Shown: piece by piece, positions 3,894-38,749 of the stretch
Position numbering within the stretch: position 1 is the first letter of the stretch
Layout of the letters: each line of letters starts with the position of its first letter
Origin: Haliotis rufescens
Lineage: Eukaryota
Length of the DNA: 64,000 nucleotides
Direction of reading: 5' to 3'
NCBI RefSeq assembly: GCF_023055435.1
Contig: NW_025963779.1
Coordinates: forward strand, 13,888,001 to 13,952,000
The notes under the pieces: model-generated
What the model was told of the DNA's origin: nothing
Databases searched by the model: none
Seen by the model: only the letters and a program-made list of their open reading frames with translations
Position numbers and translations under genes: made by a program

Positions 3894-6800
3894 ATGATGG
3901 CGTGTCGAGGCATTGCAGCGTTATTAGTTTGTGTCGTGGGCGTCACTGCTGCTGATCTTTGTTTGGTGAGTAAATCCTACATTCAGTAGAAGGTTGGAAA
4001 CTAGTCACCACATGGAGAGTCCTATTTACCAGCAATGTCTTCCGCCGTATTTGGCACGACCCGTTCAGGGACCGACCATTTAATTTTCTAGGTTGAGGCT
4101 GGGATTGTGTATAGATTTTGTTTCTTAGCAACAAAACCAGATATTTTGTATTTAAAACTATGAGCCTGAATGTTCTTGTTTTTTTTTAGAAAAAAACCCT
4201 TGCAATAATTTAATTTTTGTGACAGGCAATTTCTTTTTTTCAACAGTCTGAAGGATAATTAATTTTTTTAAAGTATTTTCGTGGACAGTTCATTATTTTG
4301 ATAGAATCCTAGCCCGAACCCCTAGAATATCAAATTGTCGATCCTATAAATGAGACCATTTCAACGAAACCTATAAACTTGGACTCCATTAAAGATAGTC
4401 ATCAACTCATATTAAAAGACTGGAAGACCAGAAGTAACCTGACATAAATGTTTCAATGCAATTCCCTTTCTGCACACGTAAGCAGAACTACATCTTGTTA
4501 AAAAAGTATCTCGCAAAACAAACAATTAATTGAGCTTACATTTTACTACCCTGTGTTTTGTAACATATCTCTTATTAAATGGCCGATCTAGGGCTATCAT
4601 TAACTTAAAATATCGCAAGTAAAACTTAGTGCTTGCGATGAAATCCTTATCAACACTTTATATATGGTCAGTTATCAGCACTGTGGTTGTCGTGAAATAC
4701 AGAACTTGAGTTCACGAGATTTCACTGCATATTGCACGGTTCTTATATGGGCACGAGCTTGATACCAAGGTAGCATTAATTATCCAAATTCTGTATTGAA
4801 ATAGGCATCCGAGTTAGTGGCTGTTTCTATTTTTGGCGTTTGTTTAGCGATAACAGTACATGAACCCTCTGTTTCAGGATTGTCAAGAGGACACTACCAC
4901 TGCTGAGCCAGTAGACCTTGTTCTGTATTATGAGTCTATGTGCCCCTACTGTCGCACGTTCATCACCACCCAACTCTACCCTACCTTCACCGCTCTGCCT
5001 TCTGGTGTCCTCAATGTCACAATTGTGCCCTACGGTAACGCTAGGGTAGGTACTGTGTCTTGTGTTCTAAGTGTCACAATTGCGCCCTACGGTAACGCTA
5101 GGGTAGGTACTGTGTCTTGTGTTCTCAATGTCACAATAGTGCCCTACGGTAACGCTAGGGTAGGTACTGTGTCTTGTGTTCTCAATGTCACAATAGTGCC
5201 CTACGGTAACGCTAGGGTAGGTACTGTGTCTTGTGTTCTCAATGTCACAATAGTGCCCTACGGTAACGCTAGGGTAGGTACTGTGTCTTGTGTTCTCAAT
5301 GTCACAATAGTGCCCTACGGTAACGCTAGGGTAGGCACTGTGTCTTGTGTTCTAAGTGTCACAATAGTGCCCTACGGTAACGCTAGGGTAGGTACTGCGT
5401 CTTGTGTTCTAAGTGTCACAATAGTGCCCTACGGTAACGCTAGGGTAGGTACTGCGTCTTGTGTTCTAAGTGTCACAATAGTGCCCTACGGTAAAGCTAG
5501 GGTAGGTACTGCGTCTTGTGTTCTAAGTGTCACAATAGAGCCCTACGGTAACGCTAGGGTAGGTACTGTGTCTTGTGTTCTCAATGTCACAATAGTGCCC
5601 TACGGTAACGCTAGGGTAGGTACTGCGTCTTGTGTTCTAAGTGTCACAATAGTGCCCTACGGTAACGCTAGGGTAGGTACTGCGTCTTGTGTTCTAAGTG
5701 TCACAATAGTGCCCTACGGTAAAACTAGGGTAGGTACTGTGTCTTGTGTTCTAAGTGTCACAATAGTGCCCTACGGTAACGCTAGGGTAGGTACTGTGTC
5801 TTGTGTTCTAAGTGTCACAATAGTGCCCTACGGTAACGCTAGGGTAGGTACTGTGTCTTGTGTTCTCAATGTCACAATAGTGCCCTAGGGTAACGCTAGG
5901 GTAGGTACTGTGTCTTGTGTTCTAAGTGTCACAATAGTGCCCTACGGTAACGTTAGGCTTAGTATTCTGTCTTTCACAATCAATGTCAACTTTAAAGCCT
6001 TACGGTTACGCCAAGGTAGTTATTCTCTCTTCTTGCGTTCTCAATGACACCATAGAGCCCAATGTAGGTATTTTGTTTTTTCAAGGTCACGATAGTAAAG
6101 GACAATAAGATACTAAAATCGTAATGACACTAAGAGACAATATTTTACAAATGAAACTGTTTCAGGAAAGGCAGCGGAACGGCACCTGGGAATTCGCCTG
6201 TCAGCACGGTTCTGTGGAGTGTCTTGGTAACCTTATCGCCGTGAGTTCGAGAGTGTCTTCATTGCAGATTTTGTAATTTCAAAATACATATTCAGCGTCA
6301 CTCCTAATTTCTATTCCATAACTGTGACGTGTAACAGATAAAACCTGAATATGAACTCAGACTGCATCTAGTCATCAGTGATAGTTAAGAGAAGAATGTA
6401 CAGATTTCTATGAACAGTTGGTCATTTTGTATTTTATCTTCAGACATGCGCCCTCAACTATACCTCCTATACACCCAGTGACTACATGCCGTTTATCAAC
6501 TGTATGGAGACCAGTACGGTTCATGGTCACGAGTTGACCGCCTTACACAAGGTACCCGTCGTTACCCTTTGTGTCAGAAGGCTTCAACATATTTTCACCT
6601 TGGATAGGTCAAGACCAGCCTGATCTTCTAGTGCTGTTAGATCGGTCGCTGCGCCCCTTCTCCAGTGGTAGTAGAATATGCTAAGTGATTGCTGCATCCG
6701 TGGTTGCCGTGAGGGGCAGTCGTTCACATGCATGTGACTATGCAATGGCCTGCGTCCGTTGTTAATGTCTTGCCGTATATACGCGTGCATGGAACTCCGT

Positions 6801-10939: not shown

Positions 10940-13932
10940 TCATGTGCCATCCCCACTCTGATGGATTCACATTGAACCCTTTCCACTCCATTATCTGGTA
11001 GTTGACATGGGGACTGTGGTATCTTGCGGCTGCAGAGGTTGTTGGCAGAGTTTATGGCTCTGCGTGTGATCAATTGTTCGTCACCTTCTCCCCAAAATCG
11101 CTCGTATCATAAGCTATACAGTCCTTCCACCTTACATCCGCCATATAAAGACATATGTTCACCTGCTTCGGTGATGACTTTTTCATCCCCAGCTTCTTCT
11201 GTTTGGCTGAGACCGCCTCCGTGGTCTAATGGTAGAGCGTCCGCCCGGAGAGAGGAAGGTCCGGGGTTCGATCCCCAGCCGCGTCATACCAAAAGACGTT
11301 AACAGATGGTACTTGTTGTTACCCTGTCTGGCGCTCGGCATTAAGGGGCTAAAACAAGGACTGGTCGGCTCGGAGTCAGTATACTGTGTCTGAGTGGGGT
11401 ATTCATGTTAAACTGCGGCATGGTATCTCAGTGAGCTAGCACTATAAATCGGCATCAGTCCGGACTAGTACAAGCAGCCACACACACACATACACGTGCA
11501 TGCACGTCGCTATATAAGTGCAATAATCTTGGACGCGACGTTTAACCCCATTTCACCTCACCTCTGTTTGGCTGAAATGTTTAGCCTGATGGCAGAAGAC
11601 GGCATCATTCATGATCTTCTTCAGCGCAAGACCCATTCCCAAGCCAAACAGGTGATAAGTGTGCCACAGCCAAGAATTGCATGTAAAAAGAGCACATGCT
11701 CACATACATCACTGCCCAGCAGCTGCTTTGATTGATCATGCACCAAATCCTGATCCTTCTTGGAGCTTGCTTGGGTTCTGGTGCCAGGAACAAGTCATGT
11801 GCTTCCTTTTCAACATGAGGAAGGAAGATAAGCAAATCTGTGTCATCTCCCACCAGGACAGTGTCTGTTTTTCTTGCAGATGTGACAGCATCTTGTTTTG
11901 CCAGCTCTCTCCAGTTTGTCACCCAGATAGGCAATAAAGCCTATTGCTTTGTTCAAGAATTCTTCCTTCTACAATTGAATGACCATTTCCCCCGTGCATC
12001 ATCATTTTGGCCATTAAAGACAATGTTAGCAGCAGCATGTTTCTGCATAACATATAGATGGTACATAGTTCAAATACGTGATATAACGTAGAACCTCTTG
12101 GTCGGGTACCCGGTGAAGTACTATCCAGAATGTACTGGACATTTCCAGGTTCTTGTTGTTTCACTTGGAGGGTGTTCCAGATAGCATCAGCAAGGGTTGC
12201 CTTCCTGACCTGAAGATAATTCAAACAATGCTGGTGGGTACCTACAGAGTTCATACTTGAACACTGCTGGTAGATAGATCTTGCAGTCTACTTGTGTGAC
12301 AGTTTATTTCACAGGGAAATGATCATTCGATCGAAGAAGGAAGCATTCTTGAACACCGCAAAAAACAAACAACCCTTTGTTGCCCGCCTGGGTGATAAAC
12401 TGGAGAGATCTGGGCGCAGTTCGGTACATACAAAACAGGCGATCATTAACTTGTGTCTTAATGGTGGATGTAAGGAGTAAAGACTGGACAGCTTAAGGCT
12501 AAAGTGGTTTTGTGAGAAGGTGACGAAGAACCCACCACATGTAAGCCACCTACTCTGCCGCCATTGCAACCTCTGTAGCCGGTATACCACAGCCTTCATG
12601 TCAACTACCAGATAATGGAGTGGAAAGGGTTCAATATGAATCCATTAGTGGGGGTGGCACAGGATAGATGGACGTTGCTTACCAATACAGTCAGATCAGC
12701 CTGCAGCACCTTCAGCACTCCTTAATATCTACTGTAATTTTTTTTTTTTTTAAAAGACTATAACACTCAAAGATGCACTTGGCGGAAATATGGCCTAACT
12801 TGCAGTGCTGTGTGCAGGAAATACCAAGCTGTACCAATAAACAGTTATCAGACTTCTCAGGGGATGACATACCTGTTGAGACTTTGAGATGCATGTATAT
12901 ATAATGACCCGGCAACGTCAAGCTACAGCATTCGCCGTGTCATTTGTTTCACTGTTCATGGATCACACAATCATGTAACGGAATGAGCAGTGGATAAATA
13001 GTTTCAGATTTATATCGAAATAATGGTATTTGGTGTAGATATTGAATTTCCGCAAATTACTACAAGGGAGATAACTCATCGACTTCTTGTGTAACAACAG
13101 TTTTGGGTTAATTCTGATAGGACCTCATACAGGTCATACTTGTTTCAAACAAGTATTTACATGAATGAAAACGAAACTTGTTATAGCATTTATTGTCATG
13201 TTAATAAGTAGATTCAGACAATAACAATCAACATTGATATCTAAACTCGCCAAAACATGTCATTTAAGAGATACATTTTGCTATTTGGGGGTTGTTTTGG
13301 ATTTATGCAAATGACTGAGTATTCTACATGCATCCTTGGGTCTGTTTACCCCAATGTAGAAGTTCAAATCACTCAAAAAGTTCATCAGAGACCAACAGTG
13401 TATTAATATTCTACGTCTAGCCATCAAACTCTTGGCGGCCATCTTGGAACATTGGGCCACCAGGGGCTCTGGTGACGGAGATTCTATCTAAAAGTGTTAA
13501 CTATATTTCAGTGAGTTAGTGTGCCAAGTTATATGCATATAAGTCCTAGCACACTGTTTTAGAGTTAAAAGATTCAACAGTGTAAACACACATTTAGGAA
13601 ACTTGTCGGCAATCTTGAAATTGGCGGCCATTTTTATTTTTTGCAGATTTGTCAATAGTCGAAAACGATCAGTAGTTGTGAATATCTTTTTAGAATTATA
13701 ATATGGCTATTTCGCAATACAACACATGCTTTTTTTTTCATCAAAACATTGAACCTCATCTGAAATATGGAAGTTTTATTGATAATTGGATTATGCAAAT
13801 TAGACATATTTCCCAAACTAGGATTGCTTGGGACTTTTAGTATGTTGTTTTTAGGACCTTGTAGAAATGCATTGTGGTGAAATAAATTCTGTTGCAATTT
13901 GTTCCAAGTGAAACCTTATTTTGCCTGGACTA
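10940..13932. mobile_element. Academ-like DNA transposon relic (XPG-like nuclease region); two fragments in opposite orientation
   Basis: Minus-strand fragments VLVGDDTDLLI, FLHAILGC, PTSAAARYHS...QIMEWKG...EWGW. Plus-strand KKEAFLNTAKNKQPF and a second QIMEWKG copy at ~12565-12660. Subterminal ggcggccatcttg motifs; terminus ...tttgcctggacta (13932). Confidence 0.6.
11211..11562 (+). mobile_element. tRNA-derived SINE family B (~350 bp, Meta/MESC-like central domain)
   Basis: Box A tggtctaatgg, box B ggttcgatccc, central gtcataccaaaagacgtt...ggcgctcggcattaagg, (CA)n, 13-bp TSD tctgtttggctga. Confidence 0.9.
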
Positions 13933-22428: not shown

Positions 22429-24395
22429 CTATTTGAACAGTTTGAATTTCTTGAAATATTTCTGCACCTCCTGTTTTGTGTAGGGCTTAGCTGCCACACA
22501 TGTTGCAATGTCCTCTGGTTGCTCCATCCACAGTTTGTGCTGGATTCCATCTTGTGTCAAACTCTCCGATAATTCTCGGAGACTCTCTTCATTTTTAGCC
22601 TGAAAAAGAATTTTCCACTGTATGTTTAGGAGCATTACAATAGAAGATGGCAACTGTCACATACATGAGCTAGATGCATCACAGTTCAGGCTGGCTTCAG
22701 AGCATCTTTCAATGTTCAGTGGAAAACATGTAGCTGTAACTGGAGTTATCTCCCATGTATCACACGTCATTTGTTAAACACCATCGAGCTTGACCTACTG
22801 CAACAAATAATATAACAAACCTTGCTGGTGTAGCGGCCATAGAATTTCTGAGTCCCGTGATGGGGATCGAACCACTGACCTTCTGATGAGGTCGGACGCC
22901 TTGTCCACACGACCAAAGAGGTTAACCCCCCTTCAGCAAGCTGACAAGGTAAGGATGTCATCTGTGGGATGACTCCACGCCCTGCTACATACTCCCCCGT
23001 CAACAGAAGGCACGTCCCTAGCCGCATAGTAGGGTACTGAGACTTAGTTTGCTTAAATTTAATATGAACGTGCTCAGCCCCGCGTTGGGCGCCAATGTAG
23101 CAGCCATAAAATTTCTGAGTCCTGTGAAGGGATTCAAACCATGGATCTTCTGATCAGAGGTCAGACGCCTTGTCCACATGACCAAAGAGGTTAACCCCGT
23201 CAGCAGGCTGACAAGGTAAGGCATGTCATCTGTGGGATGACTCCATGCTCTGCTAGACTGGGTTAGACAGGCAAGATTGAGTAGCTTATTATGCTTATAA
23301 AGGGAGCTGCCACAAAGCTGGAATATTGCTGAGTGCAGTGTTATACAACAAATGAACAAAACAAATATAAATAGGAGCTAAGCTTAGTCCCAGCAAATTT
23401 GTCATTCAAAACTCACTTTATTTGTAAACATTTTTTATTGCAGATCAGTATTGCAGTTAATGATCACCCAGTTTGACAAAAGACACTAAATACAATGGTT
23501 AGGCCTTGACTGGAGGGGGCGCCAAACCATAAGGTTCCTCGATAACCAAGTTTATTATTTATCGTACTAATATTATCCATACTTATTCGAAAAAATTTGA
23601 GAAAATTTGGCAACGATGCAGTTTACCGGGTGCAGCTTACATAGCGCTAATTGGTTTAGGCTGCCATCTTGGGCTCAGCTGTGGCTCCAGCTTTACAGAT
23701 CTTGCGTGCCTCTTGGATGCTTAGGGTTAGTTGAGTGAGTGAGTGAGTATGGTTTTACACCGCTTTTAGCAATGTTTCAGCAATATCACGATGGGGGACG
23801 CCAAAAATGGGCTTCAAATATTGTACCCATATCGGGAATCGAACTCGGGTCTTTGGTGTGGCGAGCGAACGCTTTAAGCACTAGGCTATCCGACCGCCCC
23901 AGGGTTAGTTGAGTACAGTCAAGTCTCGTTAATCTGACATCGTTGGTTGCACATGATTGTGTCGGATTAACGAGTATGTCGGATTAACGGGACTAAATAG
24001 CACTGATTCAATCGGTTCCCATCATTTGTGTCGGATAAAGCCGAGTGTCGGATTAACGAGTGTCGGATTAACGAGACTTGACTGTAGTTGGTTACTCCCA
24101 ACTCCTTAGCCCTTGGTTCCCTTATCCAATCAAGCACCCCATTACGATCATCATTGTTAATGATTACATACTAGACTTGTTTGATGTTACATGAAATGTA
24201 ATTTACCTCCAGAATGACTTTATGCATGCTATCAAGATCGGATAAATACTGTTGAGTCACTTCATCTTGGTAAAACGTGTGTATTGCTGCAGTGCAAGCA
24301 TGACATGCTTGTGCGATTAGGGCACCAGTTGGCCATTTTAATGCACTAATCAAGTCACCCCTTACAACAACATACTGCACGATAGTCGAAGACAT
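22429..24395 (-). CDS. PTRHD1: Putative peptidyl-tRNA hydrolase PTRHD1; 2 exons, 119 aa
   Basis: Exons 24395-24207 and 22599-22429 (GT-AG, phase 0). Motifs VQYVVVRGDL, WPTGALIAQACHA, MHKVILE, HKLWMEQPE, C-terminal FKKFKLFK. Confidence 0.95.
22829..23257 (-). mobile_element. Complete TRIM (miniature LTR retrotransposon) with tRNA-containing LTRs, Helenus-like
   Basis: LTRs 23257-23096 and 22989-22829; PBS TGGCGCCCAACGCGGGGC (23094-23077); PPT GGGGGAGTA (22998-22990); 4-bp TSD CTGG. Confidence 0.9.
23737..23900 (-). mobile_element. SINE family A
   Basis: 14-bp TSD agggttagttgagt. Confidence 0.9.
23916..24084. mobile_element. Tc1/mariner-pogo type MITE
   Basis: TIR cagtcaagtctcgttaatc, TA TSD, internal gtcggattaacg repeats. 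Confidence 0.9.
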
Positions 24396-38588: not shown

Positions 38589-38749
38589 TGTAGCGGCCAT
38601 AAATTTTTCGAGTCACGTGATGGGAGTCGAACCACGGACCTTCTGATCCGAGGTCGGACGCCTTGTCCACATGACCAAAGAGGTTAACCCCTTCAGCAAG
38701 CTGACAAGGTAAGGATGTCATCTGTGGGATGACTCCACGCCCTGCTACA
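38589..38749 (-). mobile_element. Solo LTR of the tRNA-containing TRIM
   Basis: TGTAGC...GCTACA, 161 bp, highly similar to 22829-22989; flanks agta/agaa. Confidence 0.88.

What the first reader, a model, noticed from the sequence alone, without database searches (positions are those of the whole stretch)
22829..23257. Complete 429-bp LTR retrotransposon whose LTRs carry a tRNA-Arg-like Pol III promoter (SINE/LTR hybrid)
Seen on -: 162-bp LTR, 1 nt, 18-nt PBS TGGCGCCCAACGCGGGGC (one mismatch to the tRNA-Lys1,2 PBS), 106-bp non-coding interior ending in PPT GGGGGAGTA, 161-bp LTR TGTAGC...GCTACA, and a perfect 4-bp TSD CTGG. Each LTR contains box A (TGGTCGTGTGG) and box B (GGTTCGATCCC); the solo copy reads GGACAAGGCGTCCGACCTCGGATCAGAAGGT, resembling tRNA-Arg(TCG). 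Established: Cassandra TRIMs embed 5S rRNA, and tRNA-bearing TRIMs named Helenus have been reported with 4-bp TSDs in animals. Inference: Pol III-driven, mobilised in trans by a Gypsy-type partner using tRNA-Lys; this family may be undescribed. It sits sense-oriented in the PTRHD1 intron.
Basis: partly seen in the sequence, partly recalled or inferred. Interest (0 to 1): 0.82.

Follow-up and report, generated by a model that had tools for sequence, protein, structure and literature searches.

The report
tRNA-bearing miniature LTR retrotransposon in abalone
This is an old, decayed copy of a tiny non-coding LTR retrotransposon whose repeats carry a tRNA-Arg-derived promoter module, a kind first described in 2024 as "Helenus"; here it is in an abalone genome, it was active recently, and a 9.2-kb Gypsy element that very probably copies it can be identified.

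Summary
Window 22829-23257 (- strand) is LTR (162) – T – 18-nt PBS – short interior – PPT – LTR (161), flanked by a 4-bp duplication. It lies in sense orientation between two PTH2-domain exons.

This copy is a fossil: its LTRs are 87% alike. The family is young. Ten other independent 428-bp copies all have perfect, different 4-bp duplications, LTR pairs 98-100% identical, and a PBS that perfectly matches the host tRNA-Lys(CTT) 3' end. Tandem (LTR-interior)n arrays also exist.

LTR positions 65-139 align without gaps to the host tRNA-Arg(TCG) gene, with good A and B boxes and one T4 run just downstream. The module is not a tRNA: Rfam and ARAGORN find nothing significant and it does not fold as a cloverleaf.

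A 9.2-kb Ty3/Gypsy element shares the PBS, the LTR termini and the 4-bp duplication. Natural chimeras of the two, themselves flanked by duplications, argue for co-packaging and shared integration.

The host is very probably Haliotis rufescens. Helenus (Kojima 2024) is reported in molluscs only from bivalves, and no published family matched. So this is a new member of a known kind.

Pol III transcription remains unproven. Other first-stage notes of this scan flag the same family elsewhere in this genome.

The parts
23258..23261 (-). Upstream copy of the 4-bp target-site duplication (CCAG on -, CTGG on +)
   Evidence: Sequence
23096..23257 (-). 5' LTR, 162 nt. It is decayed: it starts TCTAGC and ends GCTACA.
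23118..23192 (-). tRNA-Arg(TCG)-derived module of the 5' LTR. A box 23174-23184 (TGGTCATGTGG), mutated B box 23130-23140 (GGTTTGAATCC), anticodon arm 23147-23168.
   Evidence: Rfam tRNA scores only 15 bits here.
23108..23111 (-). T4 run in the 5' LTR, about 7 nt after the tRNA-like module. It is a candidate Pol III terminator and R/U5 boundary. In young copies it is the only run of four or more T on the sense strand of each LTR-interior unit.
23077..23094 (-). Primer-binding site, 18 nt. It has one mismatch to the 3' end (plus CCA) of host tRNA-Lys(CTT); young copies match perfectly.
22990..23095 (-). Non-coding interior, 106 nt: T spacer, PBS, about 78 nt, then the PPT GGGGGAGTA at 22990-22998.
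22829..22989 (-). 3' LTR, 161 nt, TGTAGC...GCTACA. tRNA-like module 22851-22923, A box 22905-22915, B box 22863-22873. The anticodon loop lacks 2 nt and the T4 run is lost (ATTCTA).
22825..22828 (-). Downstream copy of the 4-bp target-site duplication (CCAG on -)
38589..38749 (-). Solo LTR of the same family, 96% identical to young LTRs. Its anticodon arm is intact with TCG. Its flanks TTCT/TACT match at only 3 of 4 bases.
24201..24380 (-). Upstream PTH2-domain exon of the PTRHD1-like host gene (context, not part of the element)
22435..22698 (-). Stretch holding the downstream (last) PTH2-domain exon of the same gene. The element therefore lies in the intron between the two exons, in sense orientation.

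Best explanation
The stretch is a fossil insertion of a non-autonomous miniature LTR retrotransposon (a TRIM). Its subtype carries a small-RNA-gene module in the LTRs and has been named Helenus/TRIMp3.

Shown here:
- The family is 428 bp: LTR 161, interior 106, LTR 161. It has no coding capacity.
- Its PBS perfectly matches host tRNA-Lys(CTT), and a G-rich PPT precedes the 3' LTR.
- LTR termini are TGTAGCAGGG...GCTACA, and integration makes 4-bp duplications.
- It has been active very recently in this genome.
- Each LTR contains a full-length, colinear but structurally dead derivative of the host tRNA-Arg(TCG) gene. It keeps a good A box and a perfect B box and is followed by a T4 run.

Strongly inferred: the element is copied and integrated by the proteins of a 9.2-kb Ty3/Gypsy element of the same genome. 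That element shares the 18-nt PBS, the first 10 and last 6 LTR bases and the 4-bp duplication length. The two form recombinant elements joined at the shared PBS, and these recombinants were integrated as single units.

Inferred only: the genomic RNA is made by RNA polymerase III. It would start just upstream of the A box, near LTR position 59-63, and end at the T4 run of the 3' LTR. That gives U3 of about 1-58, R of about 59-149 and U5 of about 150-161, and it requires leaky read-through of the same T4 in the 5' LTR.

My odds: Helenus-type TRIM 0.95; mobilised by this Gypsy family 0.8; genomic RNA made by Pol III 0.4-0.45.
For: Structure and transposition:
- Layout.
- Ten independent 428-bp copies have ten perfect, different 4-bp duplications, LTR pairs 98-100% identical, and are 98.4-99.8% alike to each other.
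- One chimera sits inside a 50-bp satellite whose unit runs on across the insertion, with TCAA duplicated. This amounts to an empty-site reconstruction.

Copy number: 1717 first-look candidates. Motif counts at up to 2 mismatches are 1474 for the tRNA arm, 4725 for the U3 motif (satellites included) and 643 for the interior. 143 LTRs have both ends exact and are followed by a base other than T, so they are terminal 3' LTRs or solo LTRs.

PBS: 219 host sites end in the exact complement of the PBS, and ARAGORN calls one tRNA-Lys(CTT).

tRNA origin: the LTR aligns without gaps to host tRNA-Arg(TCG). The A box TGGTCATGTGG sits at the tRNA's positions 8-18 and the B box is GGTTCGAATCC. Among 28 distinct LTR copies in hand, both boxes are kept in 23 and the T4 run in 25.

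Partner:
- L082:620-9785 has 871-bp LTRs that are 100% identical and the duplication TAAC.
- It has a 533-aa gag frame with a PNMA domain and a 1391-aa pol frame with RT, RNase H and integrase.
- BLAST between TRIM and partner finds only the LTR-end plus PBS stretch.

Chimeras:
- L084:1342-3457 has TRIM LTRs around the partner's PBS and leader, with duplication TCAA.
- L079 has a partner LTR, then the PBS, then TRIM interior-LTR-interior-LTR, with duplication CGCG.
- L076 is a mosaic of both elements.

Pol III model:
- The TRIM has no TATA box and no AATAAA, and T4 occurs only at LTR 146-149.
- The partner LTR has TATAAA, AATAAA and 11 T4+ runs.
- In L076 the TRIM part begins at LTR 59-63, by GGGGT microhomology. 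This is what a forced template switch at the 5' end of the TRIM RNA would leave.

Literature: class description and the animal 4-bp rule (PMC10886601). [quoted passage not shown]
Against: - There is no transcript evidence. Three small-RNA runs gave 0, 5 and 3 reads on the element. The 'RNA?' contigs cannot show starts, ends or strand, and the species of the small-RNA runs is coded.
- The T4 run also lies in the 5' LTR, about 87 nt after the proposed start. Most Pol III transcripts would stop there before reaching the PBS.
- The tRNA module fails covariance and cloverleaf tests. A host tRNA-Thr also aligns well (z=12.5), and only four isotypes were compared.
- The start-site clue rests on one mosaic locus.
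- Partner assignment is by shared cis-sequences and chimeras, not by experiment. A third LTR type with the same PBS exists (L058, L065, L071).
- Repbase and Dfam could not be searched.
Confidence: 0.8

Rival explanations
1. Same TRIM, but the replicating RNA is made by RNA polymerase II, either from a weak promoter in U3 or by read-through from host genes and tandem arrays. On this reading the tRNA-like module is a passenger from an old SINE or tRNA insertion. At most it gives short transcripts of about 90 nt that stop at the T4 run, like the 'independently transcribed 5S RNA' of Cassandra.
For: - The T4 run lies about 87 nt downstream of the presumed Pol III start in the 5' LTR, ahead of the PBS.
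- No abundant small RNAs map to the element.
- Many copies sit in genes in sense orientation, as this one does.
- Tandem arrays could supply multi-unit transcripts, as reported for Cassandra (PMC7215508).
Against: - The TRIM LTR has no TATA box and no AATAAA, whereas the partner's LTR has both.
- The A box, B box and T4 run are kept in the young copies.
- No run of four or more T occurs in the interior or U3.
- The L076 mosaic junction falls at LTR 59-63, where a Pol III start is expected.
Confidence: 0.35
2. The tRNA resemblance is chance or convergent. On this reading the LTR is an ordinary TRIM LTR with no descent from a tRNA or SINE.
For: Rfam tRNA scores 15 bits (E=5.9) at best, ARAGORN finds nothing, and the fold is no better than shuffled sequence (z=-0.26).
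Against: - The alignment to host tRNA-Arg(TCG) is ungapped and full-length: 46/75 identical, 39/50 locally, z=17.
- The anticodon arm matches at 20 of 22 bases, with TCG in place.
- The A and B boxes sit at the tRNA's own positions.
Confidence: 0.03
3. The 267-bp unit is a satellite, or the element is a LINE-mobilised SINE, rather than an LTR retrotransposon.
For: Arrays with a 267-bp period exist, for example 16 or more units at C112:51.216 Mb. A 211-bp variant forms an array, and 49-bp arrays of the U3 motif occur.
Against: - Dispersed single copies have exactly two LTRs, a PBS, a PPT and fixed 4-bp duplications.
- There is no A-rich or simple-repeat tail.
- Such arrays are a known by-product of TRIMs, reported for LTR-11_DR (PMC10886601) and Cassandra.
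Confidence: 0.02

Closest known systems
Helenus / TRIMp3 (Kojima 2024, Biology 13:119, PMC10886601)
   Same: - It is a short non-coding LTR element with a PBS and PPT.
- It has a tRNA-derived stretch with A and B boxes inside each LTR, in sense orientation.
- Animal members make 4-bp duplications.
- PBS-level similarity points to Gypsy elements.
- Tandem arrays occur.
- The tRNA-like part is not a functional tRNA.
   Different: - The host is a gastropod (abalone). The paper lists molluscan Helenus only from five orders of pteriomorph bivalves.
- The module is closest to tRNA-Arg(TCG).
- Twelve short motifs from this LTR and interior were looked up in the paper's sequence file. Eight found nothing, and the four that hit (PBS core, B box, two LTR-end strings) are generic and lie in unrelated families.
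- Here a specific autonomous element and natural chimeras with it are identified.
Bivalve Helenus families with tRNA-Lys PBS (e.g. Helenus-3_CGi, Helenus-3_CVi, Helenus-4_SaGl)
   Same: The PBS begins TGGCGCCCAACG. The LTRs are of TG...CA type and 130-160 bp long, the interior is about 100-120 bp ending in a GGGGGA-type PPT, and duplications are 4 bp.
   Different: The LTR and interior sequences are unrelated at the motif level. Their tRNA modules were aligned by the author to tRNA-Lys-TTT, or predicted as tRNA-Thr, not tRNA-Arg.
LTR-11_DR (zebrafish and other Ostariophysi Helenus)
   Same: The total length is also 429 bp, duplications are 4 bp, there are thousands of copies, and tandem arrays occur.
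   Different: It is made of a 193-bp LTR and a 43-bp interior and has a tRNA-His PBS. Its interior is absent from this genome. The equal length is coincidence.
Cassandra (plant TRIM with 5S rRNA module; Kalendar et al.)
   Same: Its LTRs hold a Pol III promoter and a terminator, and it forms arrays of LTR plus interior units (PMC7215508).
   Different: It carries a 5S module rather than a tRNA module, lives in plants and makes 5-bp duplications. No partner is known for Cassandra.
tRNA-derived SINEs of molluscs (e.g. MESC superfamily, with a tRNA-Arg-derived head in Littorina; family also in Haliotis; PMC4758252)
   Same: They have a tRNA-Arg-derived head with A and B boxes. They are a possible donor of the module, following the SINE-into-LTR origin proposed by Kojima.
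   Different: SINEs have a LINE-type tail and variable duplications and no LTR, PBS or PPT. The one tRNA-headed SINE in this window (about 11210-11290) has a different head. Donor status was not tested.
Ty3/Gypsy (Metaviridae) LTR retrotransposons
   Same: The proposed partner has a gag frame (PNMA-type capsid domain), a pol frame in the order RT, RNase H, integrase, TG...CA LTRs and 4-bp duplications.
   Different: The finding itself encodes nothing. It shares only the PBS and the LTR tips with the partner.

Membership tests
TRIM (terminal-repeat retrotransposon in miniature) | Two direct LTRs, total length well under 1.5 kb, no coding capacity | tested here: met
   162 + 106 + 161 nt in the window copy and 161 + 106 + 161 in young copies. 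The interior is too short to encode a protein.
TRIM (terminal-repeat retrotransposon in miniature) | PBS next to the 5' LTR that is complementary to a host tRNA 3' end, and a PPT next to the 3' LTR | tested here: met
   The 18-nt PBS equals the complement of host tRNA-Lys(CTT) plus CCA. GGGGGAGTA directly precedes the 3' LTR.
TRIM (terminal-repeat retrotransposon in miniature) | Target-site duplications of fixed length at independent insertions | tested here: met
   11 of 11 full copies have perfect 4-bp duplications, and all but one pair differ. Chimeras carry TCAA and CGCG.
Helenus / TRIMp3 | tRNA-derived sequence inside the LTR, in sense orientation, with conserved A box (TRGCY...YGG) and B box (GGTTC) | tested here: met
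   LTR 65-139 is colinear with host tRNA-Arg(TCG): 46/75 identical, z=17. The A box is TGGTCATGTGG and the B box is GGTTCGAATCC.
   Rfam tRNA gives 15 bits (E=5.9) on one LTR and nothing on a young copy. ARAGORN gives 0. There is no cloverleaf.
Helenus / TRIMp3 | 4-bp duplications in animal members | tested here: met
   the rule is stated in PMC10886601.
Helenus / TRIMp3 | Transcription of the element from the LTR's Pol III promoter | tested here: inconclusive
   Small-RNA reads gave 0, 5 and 3 hits, and contigs are uninformative. Sequence features are compatible. This is unproven for published Helenus as well.
Any published Helenus family (Kojima 2024 DataS1) | Sequence identity of the LTR or interior to a listed consensus | tested here: not met
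   Eight of 12 motif look-ups found nothing. The four that hit were generic: the PBS core, the B box and two LTR-end strings (tgtagcag, ggccgctaca), all in unrelated families. The test is crude: exact 8-12-mers in a line-wrapped file.
Repbase / Dfam entry for Haliotis | An existing library entry that matches the LTR | not testable with these tools
   Neither library is on hand. Paper searches found no gastropod or abalone Helenus or TRIM report.
SINE (LINE-mobilised) | A single tRNA-type head, a LINE-derived or simple-repeat tail, and duplications of variable length | tested here: not met
   The element has two LTRs, a PBS, a PPT, no tail and fixed 4-bp duplications.
Ty3/Gypsy (for the proposed partner, L082:620-9785) | LTRs, gag, and pol in the order RT, RNase H, integrase | tested here: met
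   Pfam finds PNMA in the 533-aa frame. In the 1391-aa frame it finds RVT_1, RT_RNaseH_2, Integrase_H2C2 and rve, in that order. Atlas neighbours are named Gypsy integrase-like.

The most novel reading that the evidence does not exclude
The abalone element may be a working example of a retrovirus-like replication cycle that runs on an RNA polymerase III transcript. The dead tRNA-Arg module plus its T4 run would form the R region (start near LTR 59-63, end at 146-149). Leaky termination at the 5' copy would let a fraction of transcripts reach the PBS. The RNA would then be co-packaged with, and integrated by, one identifiable Gypsy family that has itself been active very recently. With LTR pairs that are 100% identical on both sides and natural chimeras, this would be the first animal TRIMp3-partner pair on which the Pol III hypothesis can be tested directly. 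That hypothesis has been open since Cassandra (2008) and Helenus (2024).
Probability: 0.35. Interest if true: 0.6.

Novelty: new member of a known kind. Interest (0 to 1): 0.4.

Why it matters
TRIMs with small-RNA-gene promoters (Cassandra, Helenus, Ajax) are a recently recognised bridge between SINEs and LTR elements. Two things about them remain unknown: whether Pol III really makes their replicating RNA, and which autonomous element moves them.

This abalone family adds three things:
- It extends Helenus to gastropods.
- It shows very recent activity, with identical LTR pairs.
- It supplies a concrete partner. The evidence is a shared PBS, shared LTR tips and chimeric elements that were integrated as units. 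For animal Helenus the 2024 paper could offer only PBS-region similarity.

There are practical consequences too:
- At least 1,400 to several thousand LTRs carry A and B boxes, so tRNA and SINE predictors and Pol III/TFIIIC site maps in abalone genomes will be affected.
- Young polymorphic insertions could serve as markers in an aquaculture and conservation species.

The window copy itself is an inert intronic fossil.

Tried and rejected
1. tRNA detectors. Rfam cmscan gave 15 bits on the window element and nothing on a young copy, and ARAGORN found none in the window or ten loci. I therefore rejected 'encodes a tRNA', but not 'derived from a tRNA'.

2. The zebrafish hypothesis. The equal length (429 bp), the tandem arrays and the tRNA gene arrays suggested LTR-11_DR. 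Its sequence and PBS differ, and its interior has no match in this genome.

3. Vertebrate host. I assumed this at first from the PBS and CpG decay. I dropped it when the partner's gag proved 100% identical to an annotated Haliotis rufescens protein.

4. Reads. One read-laying run used three raw small-RNA runs and one contig run. It gave 0, 5 and 3 reads with no clustered starts or ends, so it neither supports nor contradicts Pol III transcription. The species of those runs is coded and may not be the host.

5. A genome-wide hunt for copies that begin at the putative RNA 5' end. The pattern mostly caught variants with an extra G, so it was uninformative.

6. A census of solo versus full copies and of solo-LTR duplications. 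Only motif counts are given.

7. A SINE donor. The one tRNA-headed SINE in the window has a different head. MESC SINEs from the literature were not compared.

8. The PTRHD1-like exons were looked at one by one.

9. No consensus of the element or its partner was built. All comparisons are between natural copies.
Full report
**What is there**

On the - strand, window 22829-23257 reads as follows. A 162-nt LTR occupies 23096-23257. It is followed by one T and an 18-nt primer-binding site at 23077-23094. After about 78 further non-coding bases comes the purine tract GGGGGAGTA at 22990-22998, and then a 161-nt LTR at 22829-22989. CCAG lies directly on both sides.

- The 106 nt is the whole stretch between the LTRs.
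- The 5' LTR now begins TCTAGC.
- Its B box has a C-to-T change.
- The 3' LTR has lost two bases of the anticodon loop and its T4 run.
- The two LTRs are only 86.6% identical.

This copy is therefore old and inert. A solo LTR of the same family lies at 38589-38749 (-), with imperfect flanks (TTCT/TACT).

**It is a real transposon family, and a young one**

A search of the window's own genome (1.33 Gb, 615 contigs) gave 1717 first-look candidates. Every one of the 58 scored matches spans the whole element.

Ten independent single copies were examined. All are 428 bp (161 + 106 + 161) and all start TGTAGCAGGG and end in ACA (nine GCTACA, one GCCACA). All have a perfect 4-bp duplication that differs from copy to copy. 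Their LTR pairs are 98.1-100% identical, with six pairs identical, and the copies are 98.4-99.8% alike to each other. The window copy is about 93% identical to them.

Arrays of (LTR-interior)n with a 267-bp period also occur, for example 16 or more units on contig C112.

Whole-genome motif counts at up to 2 mismatches are 1474 for the anticodon-arm motif, 4725 for a U3 motif and 643 for an interior motif. The U3 count is inflated by 49-bp satellites built from that motif. 143 LTRs have both ends exact and are followed by a base other than T, so they are terminal 3' LTRs or solo LTRs.

**Primer**

Young copies carry TGGCGCCCAACGTGGGGC. Its complement, preceded by a T-arm, occurs at 219 host sites in arrays with a 297-bp period, and ARAGORN calls one of them tRNA-Lys(CTT). 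The window copy differs from this PBS by one base.

**The tRNA-like module**

- *Detectors find no tRNA.* Rfam's tRNA model gives 15 bits (E=5.9, gathering score 29) on the window's 5' LTR and nothing on a young copy. ARAGORN finds no tRNA in the window or in ten loci.
- *It does not fold as one.* The segment does not fold as a cloverleaf (z=-0.26), whereas the host tRNA-Arg does. It is not a tRNA gene.
- *It descends from tRNA-Arg.* I retrieved the host's own tRNA-Arg(TCG) genes. LTR positions 65-139 align to them without a single gap over the full tRNA length. Identity is 46/75 overall and 39/50 over the anticodon and T arms, with z=17 against shuffles. The anticodon arm matches at 20 of 22 bases, with TCG in place. 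Host tRNA-Thr scores z=12.5 and tRNA-Asp z=1.9, but only four isotypes were in hand.
- *The promoter boxes are intact.* The A box (TGGTCATGTGG) sits at tRNA positions 8-18. The B box (GGTTCGAATCC) fits the consensus perfectly.
- *T runs are scarce.* Seven bases after the module comes TTTT (LTR 146-149). This is the only run of four or more T on the sense strand of the whole element, apart from its twin in the other LTR. There is no TATA box and no AATAAA.
- *The features persist across copies.* Among 28 distinct LTR sequences in hand, both boxes are kept in 23 and the T4 run in 25.

**The partner**

I searched for the same PBS followed by a base other than the TRIM's own. This gave 41 sites. 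About twenty belong to a second element whose LTR ends GGCTACA and is followed by AATT and the identical 18-nt PBS.

- *Structure.* Two copies were read in full (L082:620-9785 and a second in L083). They are about 9.2 kb, with 871-bp LTRs that are 100% and 99.3% identical. The L082 copy is flanked by the 4-bp duplication TAAC.
- *Coding content.* A 533-aa frame holds a PNMA-type capsid domain. A 1391-aa frame holds RT, RNase H and integrase in Ty3/Gypsy order. Atlas neighbours are named Gypsy integrase-like.
- *What it shares with the TRIM.* The LTR starts with TGTAGCAGGG, the same ten bases as the TRIM, and ends with GCTACA. BLAST between the two elements finds only the LTR-end plus PBS stretch.
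- *Promoter signals.* The partner LTR has TATAAA, AATAAA and eleven T4+ runs, the opposite of the TRIM LTR.

**Chimeras**

- *L084:1342-3457.* It has TRIM LTRs (100% identical to each other) around the partner's PBS, 1.07 kb of its leader, part of its LTR, a second PBS and the TRIM interior. It is flanked by TCAA. It sits inside a 50-bp satellite whose unit continues across the insertion, with TCAA present once per unit. This serves as an empty-site control.
- *L079.* It carries a complete partner LTR, the PBS, then TRIM interior-LTR-interior-LTR, flanked by CGCG. One integration event therefore used a partner LTR tip at one end and a TRIM LTR tip at the other.
- *L076.* This is a mosaic with several switches. 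The TRIM segment begins at LTR 59-63, joined to the partner leader by GGGGT microhomology.

Joints at the shared PBS, in both directions, are what strand transfer between two co-packaged RNAs would give. I take this as strong, though indirect, evidence that this Gypsy family mobilises the TRIM.

**How it most likely works**

Shown: the element integrates like an LTR retrotransposon and uses a tRNA-Lys primer. Strongly inferred: it shares machinery with the Gypsy element.

Inferred only: the replicating RNA is a Pol III transcript.
- The internal A and B boxes would place the start 10-15 bp upstream of the A box, at the G run at LTR 59-62.
- The T4 run at 146-149 would be the 3' end. That gives U3 of about 58 nt, R of about 90 nt and U5 of about 12 nt.
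- The L076 junction falls exactly at this presumed 5' end. That is what a forced template switch at the end of the RNA would leave, but it is a single case.

The main difficulty is that the same T4 run in the 5' LTR must be read through. The model therefore needs leaky termination. The alternative is that Pol II or read-through transcripts replicate while Pol III only makes short RNAs.

The one read experiment allowed was uninformative. Three small-RNA runs gave 0, 5 and 3 reads. The contigs of a run of another coded organism show the LTR with many different flanks, but they cannot show starts or strand.

**Host and context**

The partner's gag frame is 100% identical over 300 aa to an NCBI protein named 'uncharacterized protein LOC125371765 [Haliotis rufescens]'. 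Together with the genome size and contig number, this makes red abalone, or a very close relative, the likely source.

Near-identical 31-mers of the element occur in runs under five coded organism labels.

Pfam PTH2 matches lie at window 24201-24380 and 22435-22698 on the - strand.

**Comparison with what is known**

Kojima (2024, PMC10886601) defined Helenus as TRIMs with a tRNA-derived sequence in the LTRs. Animal members make 4-bp duplications, show PBS-level similarity to Gypsy elements, are mostly not predicted to encode a functional tRNA, and form tandem arrays in zebrafish. He proposed the collective name TRIMp3 and an origin by SINE insertion into a TRIM LTR. He noted that Pol III use is unproven.

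All defining features that could be tested are met here. The family is not one of the published ones:
- Molluscan Helenus is listed only from pteriomorph bivalves.
- The vertebrate families differ in LTR length and sequence, and two of the three use a different primer tRNA.
- Of twelve motif look-ups in the paper's sequence file, eight found nothing. The four that hit were the generic PBS core, the B box and two LTR-end strings, in unrelated families.

Literature searches found no report of Helenus or of a TRIM in gastropods or abalone.

Cassandra shares the promoter-plus-terminator LTR and the tandem arrays. Gastropod and bivalve MESC SINEs, whose head was traced to tRNA-Arg in Littorina and which also occur in Haliotis, are a plausible but untested donor of the module.

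Repbase and Dfam could not be consulted.

**Verdict**

Pol III transcription remains an inference. The thing is a new member, in a new host class, of a kind described in 2024. The window copy is a fossil.

The added value is the recent activity and the identified partner with its chimeras. Several other first-stage notes of this scan flag copies of the same family elsewhere in this genome. They are the same idea repeated, not independent support.

Noticed in passing
G000:C1:30534153-30567236 (loci L042-L047) and G000:C79:12773898-12803911 (L050, L051): There are very long head-to-tail arrays of tRNA genes. About 300 tRNA-Arg(TCG) units repeat every 309 bp, and their anticodon loop reads TTCGAAT rather than the TTCGGAT of a dispersed copy at C556:30.59 Mb. 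About 219 tRNA-Lys(CTT) units repeat every 297 bp.
   Followed up: partly
L058, L065, L071 (G000:C24:24988798, C57:30788052, C112:24421737): These are fold-back junctions centred on the PBS. A third LTR type ends GGCTACA and is followed by AAA and the 18-nt tRNA-Lys PBS. Directly after that comes an inverted LTR end: an inverted TRIM LTR in two cases and its own inverted end in one. They may be snap-back products of reverse transcription. This matches another first-stage note on a 'fold-back end'.
   Followed up: partly
G000:C1:93310433-93311136 and G000:C2:43949903-43950905 (coordinates): Arrays with a 49-bp period contain the TRIM's U3 motif (GGAGTCATCCCACAGATGACATCCTT). So a minisatellite has grown out of part of the LTR, and it inflates LTR motif counts.
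   Followed up: no
L068/L069 (G000:C101:5889800-5890029): This is a shortened derivative. The LTR lacks its last 12 nt (a deletion between two TGGC repeats) and the interior is about 60 nt. It repeats in tandem every 211 bp.
   Followed up: no
L084:3458-5944: A 2.5-kb satellite with a 50-bp unit (49 copies, 90% matches) is the target of the chimeric TRIM/partner insertion. A second array with a 20-bp unit lies at 6144-6610.
   Followed up: partly
window 11210-11290 (+): A tRNA-headed SINE-like repeat has its own A and B boxes (B box GGTTCGATCCC). Its head differs from the TRIM module. The genome-wide tRNA model search returned about 330,000 rough first-look candidates, which suggests very abundant tRNA-derived repeats.
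   Followed up: partly
L005:1440-1498 against run X1 (record 1): A 176-nt contig from another coded organism matches the 5' flank of a young insertion, with one difference, and stops matching exactly at the LTR boundary. This may be an empty orthologous or allelic site, which would mean an insertion polymorphism.
   Followed up: no
window 4860-5888 (+): An open frame has a GILT (PF03227) domain at its start, followed by repetitive sequence. Another first-stage note covers this region.
   Followed up: no
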